From contig NW_021824222.1 in the NCBI RefSeq assembly GCF_006345805.1, positions 1-19,501 of the forward strand: a stretch of DNA of 19,501 nt. Reading direction: 5' to 3'. The DNA is from Octopus sinensis. Lineage: Eukaryota. Each line of letters begins with the position of its first letter. Within the stretch, counting starts at the first letter, position 1. The notes under the pieces are model-generated. The model searched no databases. It was given only the letters and a program-made list of their open reading frames with translations, and was not told the origin of the DNA. Below, piece by piece: positions 114 to 18,066 of this stretch. The position numbers were made by a program, and so were the translations under genes.

Positions 114-521
114 GGACCTTTTCCGTTTGAACGGCATCTTTAAAATAATTTCTAGTTAACTAAACACTTTTAAACTTCGTATACTGGTAGAATGTGTTTA
201 TAAAACATCTTTTTCTCTTGGCTTTATTGAGAAAATTCTATAGTTTGTAAGATATTTGTTGTTTTTTTCTTCAATTTCTGCAATTTCAACCAATCAATGA
301 CGTCCATTGAGGTAAAAAAAACATTCCGTGCTGTATGAATATGTCCCTCGTTTAAGAAACGGATTGGGTTTATTTACATTTGTGAAGAAAAAAAACATAC
401 CTTTCCCCCACCCCTAACCCTAACCCTAAAACTGATTGAAATGCAATAGATCGATACTAGGGTCATAATTAATTTCATATGACCCTGCTAGAAAAAACTG
501 CCGTTCAAACTCAAAAGATCC
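114..521 (+). mobile_element. MITE (non-autonomous DNA transposon), copy 1, complete
   Basis: Starts GGACCTTTTCCGTTTGAACGGCA; the end reverse-complements to GGATCTTTTGAGTTTGAACGGCA (about 23-bp imperfect TIR). No ORF. Flanked by TA repeat on both sides. Homologous copies at 14195-14518 and 14519-14910. Confidence 0.85.
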
Positions 522-532
522 TATATATATAT

Positions 533-703
533 TACTCTCTTTTACTCTTTTACTTGTTTCAGTCATTTGACTGCGGCCTTGCTGGAGCACCGCCTTTAAT
601 TGAGCAACTCGACCACGGGACTTATTTTTGTAAGCCCAGTACTTATTCTATTGGTCTCTTTTGCCGAACCGCTAAGTGGCGGGGACATAAACACACCAGC
701 ATC
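533..703 (-). mobile_element. tRNA-derived SINE, 3' half
   Basis: Reverse complement of the 3' part of the full SINE at 15139-15533. Confidence 0.9.
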
Positions 704-781
704 GAGTTGCTCGATTAAAGGCGGTGCTCCAGCATGGCCACAGTCAAATGACTGAAACAAGTAAAAGAGTAAAAGAGAGTA
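702..781 (+). mobile_element. tRNA-derived SINE, 3' tail fragment (inverted partner of 533-612)
   Basis: TCGAGTTGCTCGATTAAAGGCGGTGCTCCAGCATGGCCACAGTCAAATGACTGAAACAAGTAAAAGAGT matches the SINE tail. Confidence 0.9.
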
Positions 782-1090
782 TTCAAAAATGCTGTAGACA
801 GTAACTTCGAAGTTCCGATCAGTTAAACCGTCATCAAGCTGTGACGCATCGAAGTTAATCTTGGCTTCATATAATCTCTGTTGAGTTAAAACCTTCCTTG
901 GATGTCTGGGTTTAAGTGAAGGGGTAATTAGTTTTCAGGTGGCTTGTTATGGAAAGGCGTTTTGAAAAATTTTTTTATTAATTTGGTGCTGTTTTTGTTC
1001 ATGTGTGTAGAAATGAGTGAGCAGGTGTATGACTCAGCTAAACCATGTAAAAATTTAGAGACACAGAGTTATATATATATATATATACAT

Positions 1091-1255
1091 ACGATGGGCT
1101 TCTTTCAGTTTCCATCTACCAAATCCATTAACAAGGCTTTGATCAACCCAAAGCTATAGTAGAAGACACTTGGCCAAGGTGTCACACAGTGGGACTGAAC
1201 CTAGAATCTCATGGCTGGGAAGCAAGTCTCTTACCGCACAGCCATGCCTGCACCT
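1091..1255 (-). mobile_element. tRNA-derived SINE, 5' half (diverged)
   Basis: Reverse complement matches the SINE head and central domain up to the internal microsatellite. Confidence 0.85.
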
Positions 1256-2649: not shown

Positions 2650-5590
2650 CTTTCAAGTCAGAATTTGGCACTATGGCCCACTCAAGTAGGGAGTTATTGT
2701 TTACAGAGACATATCCGGGTGTAGGGGGTTTTATCCGGGATTTCTTGAAGGAATCTGTCCAAGACTTCTTGAACCCTATAGGGTCAGTTTCTGTTTTAAT
2801 GCGTTTTGGTGTAATGTTAAAGAGAGCGGGCCAATTGAGGTGAAATAATTGTGCCGTATTGTTGTTATGAGATGAGAGTGCGATTTTTGTTTTGGGCGGA
2901 TGGCACGGGGCCCAAGCCTTGGATGTACCTTAAAGGTGATGCCAACATCATTTGGCAATGCTGATGGAATATTTTCCACATCATGCAGATGATGTAGCGC
3001 TCACGACGACGTTGGAGAGAATAGAGTTTTTTAGCTTTTCTAGTCGCCCCAATAGTCGAGCCTGTCATGCCATCTATCTTTTTGTGATTGCCCTTTGAGG
3101 TGCTTCGACTTTTATGATACCTTTGTATTGTGTGGGGAGACCACAGTGGACAACAGTATTCAAGGTGGGTCGGGCAAAAGTGGAGAAGAGAAGGATAATG
3201 GTGTGGATACTCTCGACTGGAAAGTTCTGAGAATCCAGGAACACATTCTGCGGGCCATGTCAACTTTGGTGTTTATATGAGTGGCCCAGCTTACGTTGTT
3301 GTCCACAATTACTCCCAAGTCTCTGATGTTGTTGGACGCCGTGAGAGTTTCACCTGAAGGAAGGGAGTATGGGAGTTTCAGGGCATCCTCTTTTCCAAAG
3401 TGGATTAGCTCAAATTTATCCTCGTTCAGCAGCATATTGTTTTTTTCTGCCCATTGGATAACAGCCAGTAGATCTGACTGAAGGCATGTCCGGTCACTCG
3501 CCTCATTTATGACCTTCTGTAGCTTGGAGTCATCTGCAAAGATTTTTAGTTGCTGTGCTTGATGATGTCATTAATGTCATTAATGTAAATGATGAAAAGA
3601 AGTGGGCCCAGCACAGTGCCTTGCGGAACGCCACTACTGACTTTGGCTGGGCTTGATTTTACCCCTTCAACTACAACATGTTGAGATCTGTCTGTCAGGA
3701 AACACTTATCCATTTCAGTAACTTTCCAGAGACACCAATGTTGGATAGTTTTTTCAATAGTCTTGTGATCGACCCTGTCGAAGGCCTTACTGAAATCAAG
3801 GTAGATGACATCGGTGTTGGAGCCCTCTCCCAAAGCTCTCAAAATGTCCTCAAAGTGATGCAGGAGCTGCGTTAGGCAGTCCCTTCCATTACGGAACCCA
3901 TGTTGGTTGGAGATCAGCCGTCTTTTTCTTCTCCAGAAATTGGGTTATTTGAGATCTCACCACCCTCTCAAATACCTTGATGATATGAGAGGTGAGTGAG
4001 ATCGGACGGTAATTCACTGCAAGGGACTTGTTTCCCTTTTTGAAAACTGGGACAACAGACTGGACAGAAGGTTTTTTGAATATAGCCACATCCAGTGAGT
4101 TTCTCCACAGATTAGCAAGGGGAGATGCAAGTTGGTGTCGACACACCTTCAGGACACAAGCAGGGAACCTATCGGGGCCTACTGCTGAATGTGTTTTATT
4201 TCGTTATATCGCCGCTAAGACATCAGGGGCACTAAACGTTATGTCCGATATAGTGTGTTGGGGGTGACATCACTGATACAGCCCAGATCGGCCATATCAG
4301 GATTGCTGAAAACAGAGCAGTAGTATTGTTTCTGCAGTATCTCGGCCATGGATTTGGCATTATCTTGGAGAGTGCCAGTTTCGTCAATTTAGAGGGCCTA
4401 CAGTGGAGACAGTGACCCTGCGTTTCCTCGCAAATGAAAAGAACACTTTGGGGTTGAGTTTGTTTTTTTTCAATGGCCCACTTCTCCTCAGCTGATCTTT
4501 GGTTATTGATGAGGGACTTCATGCATTGTTGGAGGTTATATTTTTTGGATTCAAGCAGTGCGATAGCTGTCGAATGTGTGTGTTGCTGTTGGCAGTACTT
4601 TAGTTTGTTAATTTTTTGTTTGTTCTTTTTATTTTTCTGATAATGGTTTTTCTGTTTTGGGGATTCTGCACTTTTTGTTCACAGGTCTTGGTGGGGAGTG
4701 TTTTGCACATATGTCTGTGACGGTGTCTACAAAGATCTGCCAAGATGTTTTATGGTTGGTGGAGATGTGTGTATGTGTAAAGGACCAGTCAACATTTGAT
4801 AGCTCGTTCCTGATTGCATCCCAGTTGGCTTTATGGAGATCCATGTTGTCAAATGGTGGGCTGGAGGAAGGTCACTAGGATTAGCTTTCGGCTGGTGGAA
4901 TTTCATGTTACAGAGAACCATGTCATGGTCTGAAGAAGGGTTTTTTCCACTGTAACGTTATGTATAGTGTTAGTGTGGTTACTAAACACTAGGTCCAAAA
5001 TGTTCTGATGTCTTGTTGGTGCAAGGACAAGTTGGGACAAGAAAAACTCATTCGTAAAGTCGAAAAGTGACTCTGCTGCTTCTTTGTCAGCGGTTGAGGC
5101 GGAGTGCTTGGTTTCAAACAGTTTGTAGTCCAGTCAACACAGGGTAGATTGAAGTCTCCCATCATGAGTATGTTGCTAGAATGGCACTGTTGAATAAAGC
5201 ACTTAATGCTGTTGAGGCATTCTTTAAAGCACAGTATGGGTGTTTGGGGCGGCCTATAGAGTCCAATTACTGTCAGATCATTGGCTTTGTTGTGCACGGT
5301 GACTGATTCACAGTAGCCGTTGGAGAATATACTATTTCCATCTGCCGTAAATGAATCATGCAGGAAAATGGCAGTTCCACCCTTCCTCCTGCCGATACGA
5401 TCCGCGCGGATGGTTGTGAAATTCTTCACTCTCACTTCGCTTCCAAGTGGGAGTTGTCAAGGTGGGTCTCAGTGAGAATGAAGAAGGGATGTGGTGTGAA
5501 TGGTTACCAAACCAGTCTTCAATGAATTGGACCTTCCATTTTTGTGCATTGATGGAAGGGCTGACACCTTGTGCATTGAGTAGGAATGTG
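2650..5590 (-). pseudogene. CR1 ORF2 (APE endonuclease plus reverse transcriptase), multiply frameshifted
   Basis: Motifs across frames: LLNAQG, FILTETHL, RADR..GG, LYRPP, MGDFNLP (APE); PVFKKG, NYRPISLTS, YLDFSKAFDRVDH, SGVPQGTVLGPLLFIIYIND, FADD (RT); IRDLGVIVD, LEYCCPLWSP, RRRERY (C-terminal). Confidence 0.92.
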
Positions 5591-7768: not shown

Positions 7769-7826
7769 ACACAGGTATGGCTGTGTGTTAAGACGTTTAC
7801 TTCTCAACCATAAGGTTCGGGGTTCA
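7769..7826 (+). mobile_element. Degenerate SINE head fragment
   Basis: ACAGGTATGGCTGTGTGTTAAG...GGTTCGGGGTTCA resembles the SINE A/B-box head. Confidence 0.6.
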
Positions 7827-7881
7827 TTTAAATGTTTTTCTGTTCTAGCTTTGGGCTGATAAAAACTTCGTAGAAACCCAT

Positions 7882-8312
7882 GCCGCAGGAGTGGCTGTGT
7901 GGTAAGTAGCTTGCTAACCAACCACATGGTTCCGGGTTCAGTCCCACTGCGTGGCATCTTGTGCAAGTGTCTTCTGCTATAGCCCCGGGCTGACCAATGC
8001 CTTGTGAGTGGATTTGGTAGACGGAAACTGAAAGAAGCCTGTCCTATATATGTATATATATATATATATGTATGTATGTGTGTGTGTTTGTGTGTCTGTG
8101 TTTGTCCCCCTAGCATTGCTTGACAACCGATGCTGGTGTGTTTATGTCCCCATCACCTAGCGGTTTGGCAAAAGAGACCGATAGAATAATTACTGGGCTT
8201 ACAAAGAATAAGTCCCGGGGTCTATTTGCTCGACTAAAAAAGGCAGTGCTCCAGCATGGCCGCAGTCAAATGACTGAAACAAGTAAAAGAGTTAAAGAAA
8301 AGAGTAAAGAGT
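7882..8312 (+). mobile_element. Full-length tRNA-derived SINE
   Basis: A-box-like TGGCTGTGTGG, B-box-like GGTTCAGTCCC, central GTGAGTGGATTTGGTAGACGGAAACTGAAAGAAGCC domain (recalled as Nin/Deu-type, unverified), internal TA/TG run, AAAAGAGT-type tail. Confidence 0.92.
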
Positions 8313-10912: not shown

Positions 10913-11647
10913 TGGGTGAATGTAGCAAGGATGGCACGTATGAATGATGAAGCCACCTTGAGCATGATCCTATGAACCCGGAAAATTTTAAAACAGAGAG
11001 TTACCTACTTGCAAATAAATGTGTTAACATGTGACATTATTGACCGAGGTTACCGTGGTCTTTTCCATAGGCTTTTCTTTCCACGGATAAACCTTATCTG
11101 CTTTTCCCTTTACACTTTATATCTCTTTTCTCTTTTTTTTTTCTTTTCCTTGTTTCAGTCATTTGACTGTGGCCATGCTGGAGCATCGCCTTTTTAATCG
11201 AGCAACTGGACCCCGGGACTAATTCTTTTGTAAGCCCAGTCTTGCTAAGTAACAGGGACATAAACACACCAGCATCGGTTGTCAAGCAATGACAAACACA
11301 GACACACAAACACACACGACGGGCTTCTTTCAGTTTCCGTCTACCAAATCCACTCACAAGGCTTTGGTCTGCCCAAAGAAGACACTTGCCCAAGGTGCCA
11401 CGCAGTGGGACTGAACCCAGAAACATGTGGTTGGTAAACAAGATCCTTACCACACAGCCGCTCCTGCGCTTCATGACATTTCTGTGATACATGATCCCTA
11501 TTGATTATTTTTTAAAATTTTCTTTCCTTTTTATGATCCCTTTTGATCGAAAACCTACCCTCCTTTTCTTTCTCCCCACCAAAAAGAAAAGCTCTACCTT
11601 GTAATTTGTCCCATCTGCGTTCAGCCCTGTGTGGCTAATAAAGAAAC
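10913..11647 (+). mobile_element. Second Tx1/L1-like 3' end, interrupted by a SINE
   Basis: WVNVARMARMNDEATLSMIL* (10913-10975) matches WINVARMANMKGPILRIHL* at 9563. Terminus CAGCCCTGTGTGGCTAATAAAGAAA at 11622-11646. Continuity across the SINE is inferred. Confidence 0.6.
11123..11470 (-). mobile_element. tRNA-derived SINE with internal deletions
   Basis: Reverse complement has head, central domain and tail; several internal segments are missing relative to 15139-15533. Confidence 0.9.
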
Positions 11648-11860: not shown

Positions 11861-12047
11861 ATAGTTACAAATTGAGATAGGGGTTGTAAATGCAACCCTC
11901 CATGGGATAACATATATCCAATATACTGGTGATTGAGTATTATCTGGTAATTGATATTTGATTTTGATGTATTTCTCCATTTTCTTATCTTGTATATAAA
12001 GATATATATATATAACGGGAAGGTTTACGAAAATAAACAAAAGACGT

Positions 12048-12460
12048 AGGCACAGAAGTGGTTGTGTGGTAAGTAGCTTGCTTACCAACCACATGGTTGC
12101 GGGTTCAGTCCCACTGTGTGGCACCTTGGGCAAGTGTCTTCTACTATAGCTTCAGGCCGACCAAAGCCTTGTGAGTGGATTTGGTAGACAGAAACTGAAA
12201 GAAGCCCGTCGTATATATGTATATATATATATGCGTATGTGTGTTTGTGTGTGTGTGTTTGTCCCCCTAGCATTGCTTGACAACCGATGCTGGTGTGTCT
12301 ATGTCCCCGTTACTTAGCGGTTCGGTAAAAGAGACCGATAGAATAAGTACTGGGCTTACAAAAGAATAAATCTGGGGTCGAGTTGCTCGATTAAAGGCGG
12401 TGCTCCAGCATGGCCGCAGTCAAATGACTGAAACAAGTAAAAAGAGAAAAAAAAGAGAGA
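12048..12460 (+). mobile_element. Full-length tRNA-derived SINE
   Basis: Head, central domain and tail as in other copies; no TSD seen. Confidence 0.92.
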
Positions 12461-12603: not shown

Positions 12604-12750
12604 TCTCTTTTCTCTTTTTCTCTTTTACTTGTTTCAGTCATTTGACTGCGGCCATGCTGGAGCACCACCTTTAATCGAGCAACTCGACCCCAGGACTTAT
12701 TCTTTTTTCTAAGCCCAGTACTTATTCTATCGGTCTCTTTTGCCGAACCG

Positions 12751-12752
<2 letters not shown>
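12604..12752 (-). mobile_element. tRNA-derived SINE, 3' fragment
   Basis: Reverse complement of the SINE tail, truncated at a TA run. Confidence 0.9.
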
Positions 12753-12793
<41 letters not shown>

Positions 12794-13630: not shown

Positions 13631-14194
13631 TAATATCCCTGCACACAAAGAAATAAAAATGGTGTCCTGTGTGAATTTAAAAAGAGAAGGAAGTAAATAC
13701 TTTGATTAAATATCGGCCAGACTTATAGCCTGAAGGGTACTTCTTTGTCTGTGTATATACACATGTATATATATATATATATGTGTGTATATGTGTGTTG
13801 TTTATAACTACCATGAGACATTTTTCTCTCTCTTGTAACGATCCCTCTCTGATGCTCTTTGTCCTAACTTTAAGTTTCACGAGAATACAAATGTTCTCAT
13901 TATTGGATGGTTTAATATTCTGTAATAACAAATGCAAAGTTCCTTTATCCAGATTGCTCCTGGTCCTCACCATTTCAATGGTTATCCCTCTCTCTCATTA
14001 CACGACACCTCTGTAACTATATTCATCCCTCCGATGCCTTTTGTCATTACGCTAAGTCTCCTCACAGTAACACAAACAGGCTGGCAGTTTAATATTCTAT
14101 TATTAAAATGATGTTCGTTTAACCAATGTGATGCCTGGATGTTATTAAATCATTGGTTATCCCTGAGTCTCAAAGCACAGCCCCTCTGGTATTT

Positions 14195-14518
14195 ATTTCT
14201 CTAGGCTTTATAGACAAAAATCTATAGTTTGTAACATATTTCGTCTTAAATTTCTTGCATTTTGGCAATTTCAACCAATCAATGACGTCTATTGAGGTAA
14301 GAAACATTCTGTGCCGTATGAATATGTCCCTCCTTTAAGAAACAGATTGGGTTTATTTACATTTGAGAAGAAAAAAAGATACCCTTCCCCCTACCCCTAA
14401 CCCTAACCCTGACTCACCCTAACTCTAACCCTAAATCTAAAATAGATTGAAATGCAATAGATTGATACTAGGGTCATAATTATGGGTGACAATTTCACAT
14501 GGCACCACTAGAGAAAAT
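14195..14518 (+). mobile_element. MITE copy 2, truncated at both ends
   Basis: Colinear with about 210-500 of copy 1; expanded CCCTAA-like tract at 14395-14440. Confidence 0.85.
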
Positions 14519-14910
14519 GGCAGTTTTTTCTAGCAGTGTCATATGAAATTGTCACCCATAATTATGACCCTAGTATCGATCTATTGCATTTCAATCTGTG
14601 TTAGGGTTAGGGGTGGGAGGAAAAGTATCTTTTTTTTCTTCAGAAATGTAAATAAACCCAATCTGTTTCTTAAACGAGGGACATATACATACGGCACAGA
14701 ATGTTTTTTTACCTCAATAGACGTCATGGATTGGTTGAAATTTCAGAAATTTAAGAAAAAAAACAAATATCTTACAAATTCTAGAATTTTCTCAATAAAG
14801 CCAAGAGAAAAAGATGTTTTATAAACACATTCTACCAGTATACGAAGTTTAAAGTTTTTTAGTTATGTGGAAATTATTTTAAAAAACTGCCGGTCAAACC
14901 GAAAAGATCC
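14519..14910 (-). mobile_element. MITE copy 3, one TIR intact (14910), the other truncated
   Basis: Reverse complement begins GGATCTTTTCGGTTTGACCGGCAGTTTTTT and is colinear with copy 1. Confidence 0.9.
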
Positions 14911-14932
14911 CAAAATTTTATGAAACTTCTAC

Positions 14933-14944
14933 AAGGCAAAGACT
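14933..14944 (+). repeat. Left target-site duplication AAGGCAAAGACT
   Basis: Identical 12-mer at 15534-15545 brackets the 28S fragment plus SINE. Confidence 0.8.
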
Positions 14945-15138
14945 TCTTCCGAAGGTACGGATCCATTTTGCCGACTTCCCTTACCTACATTGGCGCTATC
15001 GACGAGAGGCTGTACACCTTGGATACCTGCTGCGGATGGTGGGTACGGACTGACTCGAGAGCTGCGATTCATTACGGACCCGGATTTTCCAGGGCCGCCG
15101 AGAGCGCACCGGCCACCGCCCAAGACACGGCGCTCTAC
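14945..15138 (-). pseudogene. 28S (LSU) rRNA fragment, about 194 bp
   Basis: Minus strand GCCCTGGAAAATCCGGG...CCGTACCCACCATCCGCAGCAGGTATCCAAGGTGTACAGCCTCT...AATGTAGGTAAGGGAAGTCGGCAAAATGGATCCGTACCTTCGG matches the conserved eukaryotic LSU segment ATCCGCAGCAGGTCTCCAAGGTGAACAGCCTCT...GTAAGGGAAGTCGGCAA. Isolated fragment, not an rDNA unit. Confidence 0.92.
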
Positions 15139-15533
15139 AGGTGTAGGAGTGGCTGTGTGGTAAGTAGCTTGTTTACCAGCCACATGGTTCTGGGTTCAGT
15201 CCCACTGCGTGGCACCTTGGGCAAGTGTCTTCTACTATAGCCACGGGCCGACCAATGCCTTGTGAGTGGATTTGGTAGACGGAAACTGAAAGAAGCCTGT
15301 TGTATATATGCATGTGTGTGTTTGTGTGTCTGTGTTTGTCCCCCTAGCATTGCTTGACAACCGATGCTGGTGTGTTTACGTCCCCGTAACTTAGCGGTTC
15401 GGCAAAAGAGACCGATAGAATAAGTACTGGGCTTACAAAAGAATAAGTCCCGGGGTCAAGTTGCTCGATTAAAGGTGGTGCTCCAGCATGGCCGCAGTCA
15501 AATGACTGAAACAAGTAAAAGAGTAAAAGAGTA
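15139..15533 (+). mobile_element. Full-length tRNA-derived SINE
   Basis: A/B-box head, central domain, CAGTC-AAAT-GACTG hairpin, AAAAGAGT tail. Confidence 0.93.
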
Positions 15534-15545
15534 AAGGCAAAGACT
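15534..15545 (+). repeat. Right target-site duplication AAGGCAAAGACT
   Basis: Identical to 14933-14944. Confidence 0.8.
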
Positions 15546-15601
15546 GATAGTGACTTCGAAGTTTCATTTGCACGCTAGCATCAGCCTAATGACAGCGTCA
15601 A

Positions 15602-15668
15602 GTGCTGGGATTGAAACTGAAACCCAAGAGATTGGGAAGTGAATACTTTGAGCAACACACTCAGCCAC
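15602..15668 (-). mobile_element. Possible old tRNA-like SINE head relic
   Basis: Minus strand GTGGCTGAGTG...GTTTCAATCCCAGCAC has A-box-like and B-box-like words at plausible spacing. Confidence 0.35.
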
Positions 15669-15821
15669 TGAAAGCACCTGATGTTTGGGTTTGAATATTT
15701 TAGTGGAATATTTAAGAAATGATGAGTGTATATATGGGTATATATGAATGTTTGTGCGTGTATGTGTGTGAGTGTGTGTTGTGTTTCTGTCGATGAGGGT
15801 TTGCAAGTATTTACGTGTCTT

Positions 15822-16332
15822 GTGTAAGAATAGCCTGGGCAAAGTTTAGAGAGCTCTTACCCCTGCTGGTGACAAAAGGCCTCTCGCTCAGAGTAAAAGG
15901 CAGACTGTATGATGCATGTGTACGTACAGCCATGCTACATGGTAGTGAAACATGGGCCGTGACTGCTGAGGATATGCGTAAGCTCGCAAGAAATGAAGCC
16001 AGTATGCTCCGATGGATGTGTAATGTCAGTGTTCATAACCGTCAGAGTGTAAGTTCCTTGAGAGAAAAGTTGAACCTAAGAAGCGTCAGTTGTGGTGTGC
16101 AAGAGAGACGTTTGCGCTGGTATGGTCATGTGATGAGATGGCTGAAGATAGTGTGTGTGCAAAAGTGTGCTACACCCTAGCAGTTGAGGGAACCTGTGGA
16201 AGAGGTAGACCCAGGAAAACCTGGGACGAGGTGGTGAAGCACGACCTTCGAACTTTAGGTCTCACTAAGAAAATGTCTAGAGACCGAGACCTATGGAAGT
16301 ATGCTGTGCGTGAGAAGACCCGGCAAGACTAG
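15822..16332 (+). pseudogene. RTE ORF C-terminal region (post-RT), frameshifted
   Basis: AWAKFRELLPLL...MLHGSETW...RRLRWYGHVMR / EGTCGRGRPRKTWDEVVKHDL...DRDLWK; stop TAG at 16330-16332. Confidence 0.9.
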
Positions 16333-17899
16333 TCAGGCCATAACCCGTGGCCCCTACCTGGGACATAGTCAGTCCTCCTGTGCATACCTTCCTTCTTGTG
16401 ACACTTATGAAGACCTGTTGAGGCAAGTGAAAATCAATCAAAAACAAATCAAAATAGATGAACATCAGCGGAATTGTATTCTTTGTGGACCAGTGCCGGT
16501 GGACACAAGAAAACCACCCAACGTGGCCGTAGCCAGTACCAGCATCGACTGGCCTCCGTGCTGTGGGCACAACAAACACCATCCGATCGTGGCCGTTCGC
16601 CAGCCTCATCTGGCACCTGTGTCGGTGGCACATAAAGACACCATCCGAAGACCCGGCGACGTAGTCAGTCCACCTGTGCATACCTCCCTCTTTATGACAC
16701 TTGTGAAGACCTGTTGAGGCAAGTGTGTGACACTTGTGAAGACCTGTTGAGGCAGAGGCAAGTGTGTGACACTTGTGGAGACCTGTTGAGGCAAGTGTGT
16801 GACACCTACTTATGACACTTGTGAAGACCTGTTGAGGCAAGTGTGTGACACTTGTGTAGACCTGTTGAGGCAAGTGAAAATCAAATCAAATCAAATCAAA
16901 CCAATCAAAATAGATGAACATCAATGGAATTTGTATCTTTGTGGTACCAGTACCGTTGGCACACAAGAAAACCATCCGAACGTGGCCGTAGCCAGTTACC
17001 GCATCGACTGGCCTCTGTGACGTGGGCACATAACAAACACCATCCGATCGTGGCCGTTCGCCAGCCTCATCTGGCACCTGTGTCGGTGGCACATAAAAAA
17101 CACCACGAAGACCCGGCAAGACTAGTCAGGCCATAACCGTGGCCCCTACCTGCGACGTAGTCAGTCCACCTGTGCATACCTTCCTTCTTGTGACACTTGT
17201 GAAGACCTGTTGAGGCAAGTGAAAATCAATCAAATCAAATCAAATCAAAATAGATGAACATCAATGGAATTTGTATCTTTGTGGTACCAGTGCCGGTGGC
17301 ACACAAGAAAACCATCCGAACGTGGCCGTAGCCAGTACCGCATCGACTGGCCTCCGTGCTGTGGGCACGTAACAAACACCATCCGATCGTGGCTGTTCGC
17401 CAGCCTCATCTGGCACCTGTGTCGGTGGCACATAAAAACACCATCCGAAGACCCGGCAAGACTAGTCAGGCCATAACCCGTGGCCCCTACCTGCGACGTA
17501 GTCAGTCCACCTGTGCATACCTTCCTTCTTGTGACACTTGTGAAGACCTGTTGAGAGGCAAGTGAAAATCAAAATCAAACAAATCAAAATAGATGAACAT
17601 CATGGAATTTGTATCTTTGTGGTACCATGCCGGGGTGCACACAAGAAAATCATCCGAACGTGGCCGTAGCCAGTACCGCATAGACTGGCCTCCGTGCTTT
17701 GGGACGTAACAAACACCATCCGATCGTGGCCGTCCGCCAGCCTCATCTGGCACCTGTGTCGGTGGCACATAAAAACACCATCGAGCGTGGCCGTCTGCCA
17801 GCCTCGTCTGGCACCTGTGTCGGTGGCACATAAAAACACCATCCGAGCGTGGCCGTTCGCCAGCCTCGTCTGGCACCTGTGTCGGTGGCACAAAAAATC
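16314..17899 (+). repeat. Four tandem units of about 335 bp plus extra subunits of about 60 bp
   Basis: GAAGACCCGGC starts units at 16314, 16647, 17107 and 17447 (lengths 333, 460, 340, about 336). Confidence 0.9.
16695..16876 (+). repeat. Five copies of a 33-bp minisatellite TGACACTTGTGAAGACCTGTTGAGGCAAGTGTG
   Basis: Direct tandem copies inside unit 2, with small insertions. Confidence 0.9.
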
Positions 17900-18066
17900 A
17901 CCCACTACACTCTCGGAGTGTTGGCGTTAGGAAGGGCATCCAGCTGTAGAAACACTGCCAGATCTGACTGGCCTGGTGCAGCCTTCGGGCTCCCCAGACC
18001 CCAGTTGAACCGTCCAACCCATGCTAGCATGGAAAACGGATGCTAAATGATGATGATGATGATGAT

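What the first reader, a model, noticed from the sequence alone, without database searches (positions are those of the whole stretch)
14933..15545. Antisense 28S rRNA fragment and a SINE inserted together inside one 12-bp TSD
Seen: AAGGCAAAGACT - 194 bp antisense 28S - full-length SINE - AAGGCAAAGACT, with no spacer at the 28S/SINE junction. The final CT of the left TSD also matches the expected continuation of antisense 28S (2-nt microhomology, assuming the usual AAGG in the rRNA). Known: ordinary template-switch chimeras such as U6-L1 keep both RNAs in the same sense, whereas inverted 5' segments arise by twin priming. Inference: the second nicked strand primed reverse transcription on a different RNA (28S) and the two cDNAs were joined, which is twin priming in trans. 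Alternatively this is a composite SINE that is itself mobile.
Basis: partly seen in the sequence, partly recalled or inferred. Interest (0 to 1): 0.8.

Follow-up and report, generated by a model that had tools for sequence, protein, structure and literature searches.

The report
Backwards rRNA piece fused to SINE
A 194-base backwards copy of ribosomal RNA and a full-length jumping element (SINE) sit inside one 12-base duplication in an octopus-like genome, as expected if one insertion event copied two RNAs from the two sides of the same DNA break; this kind of event has already been proposed for human LINE-1.

Summary
AAGGCAAAGACT occurs exactly at 14933-14944 and 15534-15545. Between the two copies lie 194 nt of antisense 28S rRNA (14945-15138) and a 395-nt SINE with A- and B-box-like motifs (15139-15533), with no spacer.

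A true 28S contig (L001) matches 14943-15142 at 193/200. The match runs 2 nt (CT) into the left duplication and 4 nt (AGGT) into the SINE head, so both junctions carry microhomology. Five of the seven differences are CpG transitions in the window copy, which marks it as an aged genomic pseudogene. Neither part has a duplication of its own.

The polarity fits a cDNA primed by the nicked top strand on sense 28S rRNA and then joined to a near-full-length SINE cDNA, that is, twin priming on two RNAs.

I could not test copy number or an empty site. No collection I could reach holds host DNA, and a SINE-core positive control found nothing.

The mechanism is not new. A 2026 human catalogue attributes antisense 5S, tRNA, U5 and some 28S LINE-1 chimeras to twin priming. 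What is new is the setting: a SINE as the sense partner, and an octopod element with an 8-nt-repeat tail. An inverted SINE dimer at a paralogous site (533-781) may be a second case.

The parts
14933..14944 (+). Left target-site duplication AAGGCAAAGACT. Its last two bases (CT, 14943-14944) also continue the antisense 28S homology.
14945..15138 (-). 28S rRNA fragment, sense on the minus strand, about Rfam LSU model positions 1758-1945, ending just before the GGAUUGGCUC core. With the overlaps the homology spans 14943-15142.
   Evidence: Rfam E = 5e-07. 193/200 identity to the true 28S contig L001, with 5 of 7 differences being CpG transitions in the window copy.
15139..15142 (+). AGGT. These 4 nt are shared by the antisense 28S continuation and the SINE 5' leader, giving microhomology at the join of the two cDNAs.
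   Evidence: L001 reads ...GCTCTAC-AGGT-ACCATA. SINE copies at 1255(-) and 12046 begin GTAGGT / GTAGGC. VPVERR (GTA CCT GTA GAG...) is conserved in 7 independent 28S-derived ORFs.
15139..15533 (+). Near-full-length SINE. It has an A-box-like TGGCTGTGTGG at 15150-15160, a B-box-like GGTTCAGTCCC at 15193-15203, an internal TA/TG microsatellite at about 15300-15335, and a 3' tail GTAAAAGA GTAAAAGA GTA at 15515-15533.
   Evidence: Alignment with other window copies. The only database relative of a SINE-derived ORF is from Argonauta hians. ARAGORN and the Rfam tRNA model do not call the head.
15534..15545 (+). Right target-site duplication AAGGCAAAGACT. Its first AAG could equally be tail, so there are up to 3 nt of overlap at the first-strand priming site.
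14191..14912 (.). Context only: a palindromic (foldback) repeat X centred at about 14520, ending ...AAAAAACTGCCGGTCAAACCGAAAAGATCC 20 nt before the left duplication.
15546..15563 (+). Context only: the right-flank motif GATAGTGACTTCGAAGTT, shared with 798-815 next to the inverted SINE dimer.

Best explanation
One retrotransposition event produced the whole 589-bp insert.

1. A LINE endonuclease nicked the bottom strand at the left edge of AAGGCAAAGACT. That 3' end primed reverse transcription on the 8-nt-repeat tail of a SINE RNA and ran to, or within 2 nt of, its 5' end.
2. The top strand was cut 12 nt downstream. Its free end (...AAGACT-3') paired through CT with an internal AG of a sense 28S rRNA, the most abundant RNA in the cell. 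It primed a second cDNA of about 196-200 nt.
3. The 3' ends of the two cDNAs annealed through AGGT/ACCT and were filled in. This left antisense 28S, then sense SINE, inside one 12-bp duplication.

Shown directly: the architecture, the polarity, the three overlaps, the pseudogene-type decay, and the absence of separate duplications. Inferred: which enzyme acted, the order of steps, and that the 28S template was RNA rather than DNA.
For: - The exact 12-nt duplication abuts both outer boundaries. There is no duplication around either part alone.
- 28S homology to the true 28S contig L001 is 193/200 over 14943-15142, overlapping the left duplication by CT and the SINE by AGGT.
- Polarity is right: the 28S position nearest the rRNA 3' end (model ~1945) lies against the left duplication, and the 5'-most (~1758) at the inner junction. 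This is what top-strand priming predicts.
- ACCUGUAGAG is conserved in seven independent 28S-derived ORFs, so the AGGT overlap does not depend on L001 alone.
- Five of the seven differences are CpG-to-TpG/CpA changes in the window copy, which points to real, aged genomic DNA.
- Template switching and RNA ligation give same-sense chimeras, while antisense partners are attributed to twin priming (PMC13174262; PMC2912911).
- The inverted SINE dimer at 533-781 has SINE tails at both outer ends and a 3-nt TCG overlap at the join. It suggests the same machinery can prime from both sides of a break.
Against: - This is a single locus. No orthologous empty site, no reads and no genome-wide copy count were available.
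- The 2-nt overlap is weak on its own (1 in 16 by chance).
- The 4-nt overlap assumes the SINE RNA carries the AGGT leader. Two of four other 5' ends in the window have it (GTAGGT, GTAGGC) and two start 6 nt further in.
- End joining that captures a pre-made 28S cDNA or rDNA fragment would leave the same scars.
- The partner LINE and its nicking preference are unknown.
- The species of L001 is not given, so some of the seven differences could be between species.
Confidence: 0.6

Rival explanations
1. Filler capture. The SINE inserted by ordinary target-primed reverse transcription. While its 5' end was being joined to the upstream target by end joining, a free 28S cDNA or rDNA fragment was captured in a random orientation. 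No priming by the top strand was involved.
For: Short overlaps of 2 and 4 nt at both joins are also the signature of microhomology-mediated end joining. The single duplication would be kept.
Against: It needs a pre-existing DNA copy of an internal 28S segment at the break. The left overlap sits exactly at the 3' terminus of the cut top strand, as priming predicts. A reverse transcriptase and abundant 28S rRNA are already at the site. The human catalogue reads antisense partners as twin priming.
Confidence: 0.15
2. Composite RNA. A SINE copy lying antisense inside an rDNA unit or a 28S pseudogene was transcribed from upstream, or the reverse transcriptase switched from the SINE 5' end onto an antisense rDNA transcript. 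The 28S-SINE RNA was then copied as one template. This includes the reader's alternative of a mobile composite family.
For: It would give one duplication and a spacer-free junction. Nothing I could search excludes other copies, because the controls show no host DNA in the collections.
Against: The A- and B-box-like motifs lie downstream of the 28S piece, so polymerase III would start at about the SINE 5' end and leave the 28S piece out (direct reading). Antisense 28S RNA is very rare compared with sense rRNA. None of the other SINE copies or fragments in the window has 28S upstream. The only protein hits to junction-spanning ORFs are true 28S ORFs that stop matching at the junction, although the database holds almost no octopod ORFs.
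Confidence: 0.12
3. Two separate events. Either the SINE inserted first and a later break exactly at its 5' junction took up a 28S fragment, or a tailless 28S retropseudogene came first and the SINE landed at its edge.
For: Tailless, 3'-truncated rRNA retrocopies flanked by duplications exist in mammals (PMC2912911). SINEs are dense here, at about one per 3 kb.
Against: No second duplication flanks either part (best 5 and 6 nt). The second event would have to hit the junction to the base without loss of the duplication or of the SINE head.
Confidence: 0.07
4. Assembly or library artefact. A chimeric read joined rRNA-derived sequence to a SINE locus.
For: rRNA is a common contaminant. I had no reads to inspect.
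Against: The fragment differs from true 28S by CpG-decay changes, including one at a conserved core position (GGAGACC to GGATACC). It lies precisely between a duplication and a SINE 5' end, with microhomology at both joins.
Confidence: 0.04

Closest known systems
LINE-1 twin priming (5' inversion; Ostertag and Kazazian 2001, as summarised in PMC2912911 and PMC12016303)
   Same: Two cDNAs are primed from the two sides of a staggered break. The 5' segment is inverted, there is a single target-site duplication, and there is microhomology at the upstream junction and at the inversion junction.
   Different: There both cDNAs copy one L1 RNA. Here the two templates are unrelated RNAs (28S rRNA and a SINE), neither is the LINE itself, and the element has an 8-nt-repeat tail rather than poly(A). 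In humans 5' inversion is very rare for Alu (0.02% of germline insertions).
Antisense ncRNA/LINE-1 chimeric insertions in human (5S rRNA, tRNA halves, U5, 17% of 28S/LINE-1; PMC13174262, 2026)
   Same: An abundant non-coding RNA fragment lies in antisense at the 5' side of a retroelement inside one duplication. The authors explain this by twin priming on a second RNA. 28S fragments there have a median of 269 nt, against 194 nt here.
   Different: The sense partner there is LINE-1 with a TT/AAAA nick site and poly(A). Here it is a SINE in an octopod-like genome, and the bottom-strand nick is at GCCTT/GTAGA. The 28S region commonly used there (3636-4115 of human 28S) is not the one used here.
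U6/L1-type template-switch chimeric retrogenes (Buzdin et al. 2002, 2003; cited in PMC2912911)
   Same: Bipartite retrocopies of two RNAs inside one duplication, with no spacer.
   Different: Both parts there are in the same sense, and the 5' partner is usually a full-length small RNA. Here the partner is inverted and is an internal 28S segment.
SINE28 and other rRNA-headed SINEs (cited in PMC13174262)
   Same: 28S-derived sequence joined to a LINE-dependent element.
   Different: Those are multicopy families in which the rRNA part is in sense and forms part of the transcribed unit. Here the 28S part is antisense and upstream of the polymerase III boxes, and no second copy was seen.
Tailless retropseudogenes of tRNA, rRNA and snRNA (Schmitz et al. 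2004; PMC2912911)
   Same: A 3'-truncated internal rRNA fragment copied into DNA without a tail, primed by short complementarity.
   Different: Those stand alone within their own duplications. Here the fragment shares its duplication with a SINE.

Membership tests
Twin-priming product (5'-inverted non-LTR insertion) | One target-site duplication around the whole insert, and none around either part | tested here: met
   12/12 at the outer edges. The best repeat around the SINE alone is 5 nt, and around the 28S piece alone 6 nt.
Twin-priming product (5'-inverted non-LTR insertion) | The 3' segment is in sense, with its tail against the downstream duplication | tested here: met
   The tail GTAAAAGAGTAAAAGAGTA ends at 15533 and the duplication starts at 15534.
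Twin-priming product (5'-inverted non-LTR insertion) | The 5' segment is inverted, with the template's 3'-proximal end against the upstream duplication | tested here: met
   Rfam model position ~1945 lies at 14945 and ~1758 at 15138, on the minus strand.
Twin-priming product (5'-inverted non-LTR insertion) | Microhomology between the cut top-strand end and the template, and at the inversion junction | tested here: met
   CT (2 nt) and AGGT (4 nt) against the true 28S contig L001. The AGGT leader is seen in 2 of 4 other SINE 5' ends.
Twin-priming product (5'-inverted non-LTR insertion) | Both segments derive from one RNA molecule, with nearby breakpoints | tested here: not met
   The segments are 28S rRNA and a SINE. 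This makes it the in-trans variant, not classic twin priming.
Twin-priming product (5'-inverted non-LTR insertion) | Made by a LINE endonuclease and reverse transcriptase | not testable with these tools
   The partner LINE was not identified. The degraded LINE at about 2865-5435(-) shares no 3' end with the SINE.
Template-switch chimeric retrogene (U6/L1 type) | Both RNA-derived parts are in the same orientation | tested here: not met
   28S is on the minus strand and the SINE on the plus strand.
Antisense ncRNA/LINE-1 chimera (PMC13174262) | The sense partner is LINE-1, with a poly(A) tail and a TT/AAAA nick site | tested here: not met
   The sense partner is a SINE with an 8-nt-repeat tail, and the bottom-strand nick context is GCCTT/GTAGA.
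Antisense ncRNA/LINE-1 chimera (PMC13174262) | An antisense ncRNA fragment lies 5' of the retroelement inside one duplication | tested here: met
Mobile composite SINE family | Several copies share the internal junction and have different duplications | not testable with these tools
   The junction pattern is absent from metagenome contigs. However, the SINE-core positive control is also absent from the metagenome, genome and viral collections. The protein databases hold almost no octopod ORFs.
Mobile composite SINE family | The promoter is placed so that the whole composite is transcribed | tested here: inconclusive
   The A- and B-box-like motifs (15150-15160, 15193-15203) lie downstream of the 28S part, so a polymerase III start near 15139-15143 would exclude it. 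This is read from the sequence only.
tRNA-derived SINE | A tRNA-like head with A and B boxes, many dispersed copies, and a LINE-type 3' tail | tested here: inconclusive
   Box-like motifs are present, there are at least 7 further copies or fragments in the window, and there is a relative in Argonauta hians. Neither ARAGORN nor Rfam calls a tRNA in the head.

The most novel reading that the evidence does not exclude
The LINE machinery that moves this octopod SINE primes from both sides of the break far more often than L1 does with Alu, and picks up whatever RNA is at hand (28S rRNA, or a second SINE RNA). It may also prefer one short site in a foldback repeat. On this reading, the 28S-SINE chimera and the inverted SINE dimer at the paralogous site 533-781 are two products of one recurrent process within 19.5 kb.
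Probability: 0.2. Interest if true: 0.55.

Novelty: new member of a known kind. Interest (0 to 1): 0.4.

Why it matters
The locus is a clean, base-resolved example showing that a second reverse transcription primed by the top strand can use an unrelated cellular RNA even when the primary template is a SINE, and in a non-mammalian, non-L1 system. Because 5' inversion of Alu is almost never seen in humans, a genome-wide count of such octopod chimeras would show whether second-strand priming depends on the LINE clade. It would also show how often rRNA pseudogene fragments are seeded this way. As a single locus, it mainly extends a mechanism already proposed for human LINE-1.

Tried and rejected
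1. **Copy number and empty site.**
   - An exact look-up of the junction-spanning 106-aa ORF found no record.
   - Homologue searches with the plus-strand and minus-strand junction ORFs returned only true 28S ORFs, whose match stops at the junction.
   - The junction pattern found nothing in metagenome contigs.
   - These nulls carry no weight. A 41-nt SINE-core control found nothing in the metagenome, genome or viral collections. SINE ORFs found one Argonauta protein and then nothing.
2. **Argonauta locus L002 (20 kb).** It holds only one partial SINE (positions 68-162), so it gave no help with the 5' end.
3. **A paralogous empty site in the window.** The paralogue of the left flank (114-521) either ends before the site or carries its own SINE insert there.
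4. **Octopus-specific 28S break.** It lies in helix 88, far 3' of this fragment, so it does not explain either boundary (PMC13321053). Whether the fragment's 5' end is the start of the protostome 28S-beta half could not be tested.
5. **Similarity of the duplication to the tail unit.** Only AAAGA is shared. I dropped this idea.
6. **Homology of the spacers between the two paralogous insertion sites.** It is not significant (1508 of 5000 shuffles).
7. **Species of L001.** The run SRR23636718 is not mentioned in the paper library.

Full report
**What is there**

The sequence reads CTAC-AAGGCAAAGACT-[194 nt]-[395 nt]-AAGGCAAAGACT-GATAG. The two 12-mers lie at 14933-14944 and 15534-15545.

The 194-nt block (14945-15138) has 59% G+C in a window of 39%. 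Rfam assigns it to eukaryotic LSU rRNA on the minus strand (E = 5e-07, model positions about 1758-1945). It falls below the gathering score only because it is a fragment.

The 395-nt block (15139-15533) is a SINE. It aligns with full or partial copies at 7886-8300, 12046-12452, 11136-11465(-), 1081-1255(-), 12612-12753(-), 537-709(-) and 702-777. It has an A-box-like TGGCTGTGTGG, a B-box-like GGTTCAGTCCC, an internal TA/TG microsatellite, and a tail of GTAAAAGA units. ARAGORN and the Rfam tRNA model do not call the head, so "tRNA-derived" is only a reading of the box motifs.

**Comparison with a true 28S**

A 106-aa ORF (14920-15240) happens to run through the left duplication, all of the antisense 28S and into the SINE. 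Its only database relative is P0001, an antisense ORF on a 1641-nt Logan contig (L001, run SRR23636718). That contig is a genuine 28S (Rfam 634.7 bits).

L001 matches window 14943-15142 at 193/200 without gaps. The reference reads ...GGAGCCAATC-CT-TCTTCCGAAGG... at the left end and ...GCGCTCTAC-AGGT-ACCATATCC... at the right end.

Seven further 28S-derived ORFs from the representative library all read VPVERR (GTA CCT GTA GAG CGC). The ACCU upstream of GUAGAG is therefore conserved, and the overlap does not depend on L001 alone.

Five of the seven differences are transitions at CpG sites of the reference, and one of the two others hits a conserved core position (consensus). This is what an aged pseudogene looks like if CpG sites are methylated in this host. 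It is not what a contaminating rRNA read looks like.

**The SINE 5' end**

Two other copies begin GTAGGT/GTAGGC followed by (G/A)CAG(G/A)AG. Two begin 6 nt further in, at GCAGGAG, which is about tRNA position +1 relative to the A box. The copy in question begins AGGTGTAGGAG. It is therefore full-length to within 2 nt. The AGGT can be read as SINE leader, as 28S, or as both. With only four comparators this is the weakest link in the description.

**One event or two**

The longest direct repeat around the SINE alone is 5 nt, and around the 28S piece alone 6 nt. Both are ordinary chance values in this window. The 12-mer abuts both outer boundaries exactly. A two-step history would need the second event to strike the first junction to the base.

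**Mechanism**

- With the SINE tail on the right, first-strand priming came from the bottom strand nicked at the left edge of the duplicated 12-mer. Up to 3 nt (AAG) are shared with the tail.
- The top strand, cut 12 nt downstream, ends ...AAGACT-3'. A cDNA primed from it appears on the plus strand as antisense template, and starts with the template's 3'-most copied base.
- This is exactly the observed polarity: model ~1945 next to the duplication and ~1758 at the inner junction, with CT as the primer/template overlap.
- The 3' ends of the two cDNAs can pair through AGGT/ACCT.
- Template switching from the SINE 5' end, or RNA ligation, would put sense 28S upstream of the SINE. An antisense rDNA transcript would be needed to obtain the observed orientation (reasoning from target-primed reverse transcription; orientation rule as stated in PMC13174262).

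I therefore favour top-strand priming on sense 28S rRNA (0.6). The rivals are:
- end-joining capture of a 28S cDNA or DNA fragment (0.15);
- a composite or read-through RNA, which includes a mobile family (0.12);
- two separate events (0.07);
- an artefact (0.04).

**What could not be tested**

Copy number, the empty site and read support were out of reach. The junction is absent from the metagenome collection. However, a 41-nt SINE-core control is also absent from the metagenome, genome and viral collections. The protein databases hold almost no octopod ORFs: there is one Argonauta hians hit for one SINE ORF and none for another. These nulls therefore say nothing about copy number. The Argonauta hit and the 96.5% match to L001 place the window in or near the octopods, but the species is not established.

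**Comparison with what is known**

- Classic twin priming uses one L1 RNA (PMC2912911).
- A 2026 human catalogue describes chimeric LINE-1 insertions with antisense 5S rRNA, tRNA halves and U5, and reports 18 28S/LINE-1 chimeras of which 17% are antisense. It explicitly proposes twin priming for the antisense classes (PMC13174262).
- 5' inversions of Alu are almost absent in humans, at 0.02% of germline insertions (PMC12016303).

The present locus is thus a new member of a known kind. It has the same architecture and the same inferred mechanism. It differs in having a SINE rather than the LINE as the sense partner, a tail of 8-nt repeats rather than poly(A), a nick site unlike that of L1, and a cephalopod-like host. 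It fails the one-RNA criterion of classic twin priming and the same-sense criterion of U6/L1-type chimeras.

**A possible second case in the same window**

At 533-781 a minus-strand SINE segment (positions about 393 to 220, with the reverse-complemented tail at the left edge) is joined through TCG to a plus-strand SINE segment (about 315-393, with the tail at the right edge). Tails at both outer ends are what two priming reactions on two SINE RNAs from one break would give. At best a 4-nt duplication (TATT) flanks it.

Its flanks are paralogous to those of the 28S-SINE insert:
- the end motif AACTGCCGKTCAAAC...AAAAGATCC of a foldback repeat lies on the left (496-521 against 14885-14912);
- GAYAGTRACTTCGAAGTT lies on the right, 16 and 12 nt after the respective SINE tails;
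- ACTTCGAAGT occurs nowhere else in the window.

The SINE parts are 96% alike, while the repeat arms are 88.5% alike and the spacers are not significantly similar. This favours independent insertions close together in two copies of one repeat. Whether that reflects a preferred site is unexplained.

**Verdict**

Novelty is modest, because the mechanism has been proposed for human LINE-1. Interest is 0.4.

Noticed in passing
window 533-781: An inverted SINE dimer. SINE positions ~393-220 lie on the minus strand and are joined (TCG shared) to positions ~315-393 on the plus strand, so SINE 3' tails sit at both outer ends. At most a 4-nt TATT duplication flanks it. It looks like two priming reactions on two SINE RNAs at one break.
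   Followed up: partly
window 492-532 and 782-815, compared with 14881-14921 and 15546-15563: The flanks of the SINE dimer and of the 28S-SINE insert are paralogous. They share a repeat-end motif on the left and GAYAGTRACTTCGAAGTT on the right, and ACTTCGAAGT occurs only at these two places. Two SINE-type insertions therefore landed within about 30 nt of each other in two copies of one repeat. This could be a hot spot or chance.
   Followed up: partly
window 14191-14912 (centre ~14520) and 114-521: A long near-perfect palindrome (arms 82-94% complementary) built from a ~400-bp repeat with inverted ends. It contains telomere-like CCCTAA/TTAGGG runs at about 14390-14440 and 14597-14617.
   Followed up: partly
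window 15566-15680, minus strand: A different short SINE-like element with box-like motifs (TGGCTGAGTG, GGTTTCAGTTTCAATCCC). Its 3' end abuts the right duplication. A similar head fragment lies at about 7780-7830.
   Followed up: no
window ~2865-5435, minus strand: A degraded LINE with a reverse transcriptase (RVT_1, E = 1.9e-10) and an endonuclease domain (Exo_endo_phos_2), broken by frameshifts. It shares no 3' similarity with the SINE.
   Followed up: partly
window 15815-16180, plus strand: A 121-aa ORF that resembles the C-terminal region of a LINE reverse transcriptase. This is my reading only; there is no Pfam hit.
   Followed up: partly
window 16844-17784 (also 16695-16876 and 17711-17902): A tandem array with a 340-bp unit (2.8 copies, 93% matching), flanked by 33-bp and 62-bp sub-repeats.
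   Followed up: no
protein P0008 (database hit, not in the window): A 593-aa predicted protein that starts as a 28S-derived reading frame and continues into a zinc-finger/Myb-like region. This would fit an R2-type element inserted in a 28S gene of some invertebrate.
   Followed up: no
window 12612-12753 (minus strand) and 1081-1255 (minus strand): SINE fragments truncated exactly at TA microsatellites. The SINE's internal TA/TG tract varies from about 9 to about 40 nt among copies.
   Followed up: no
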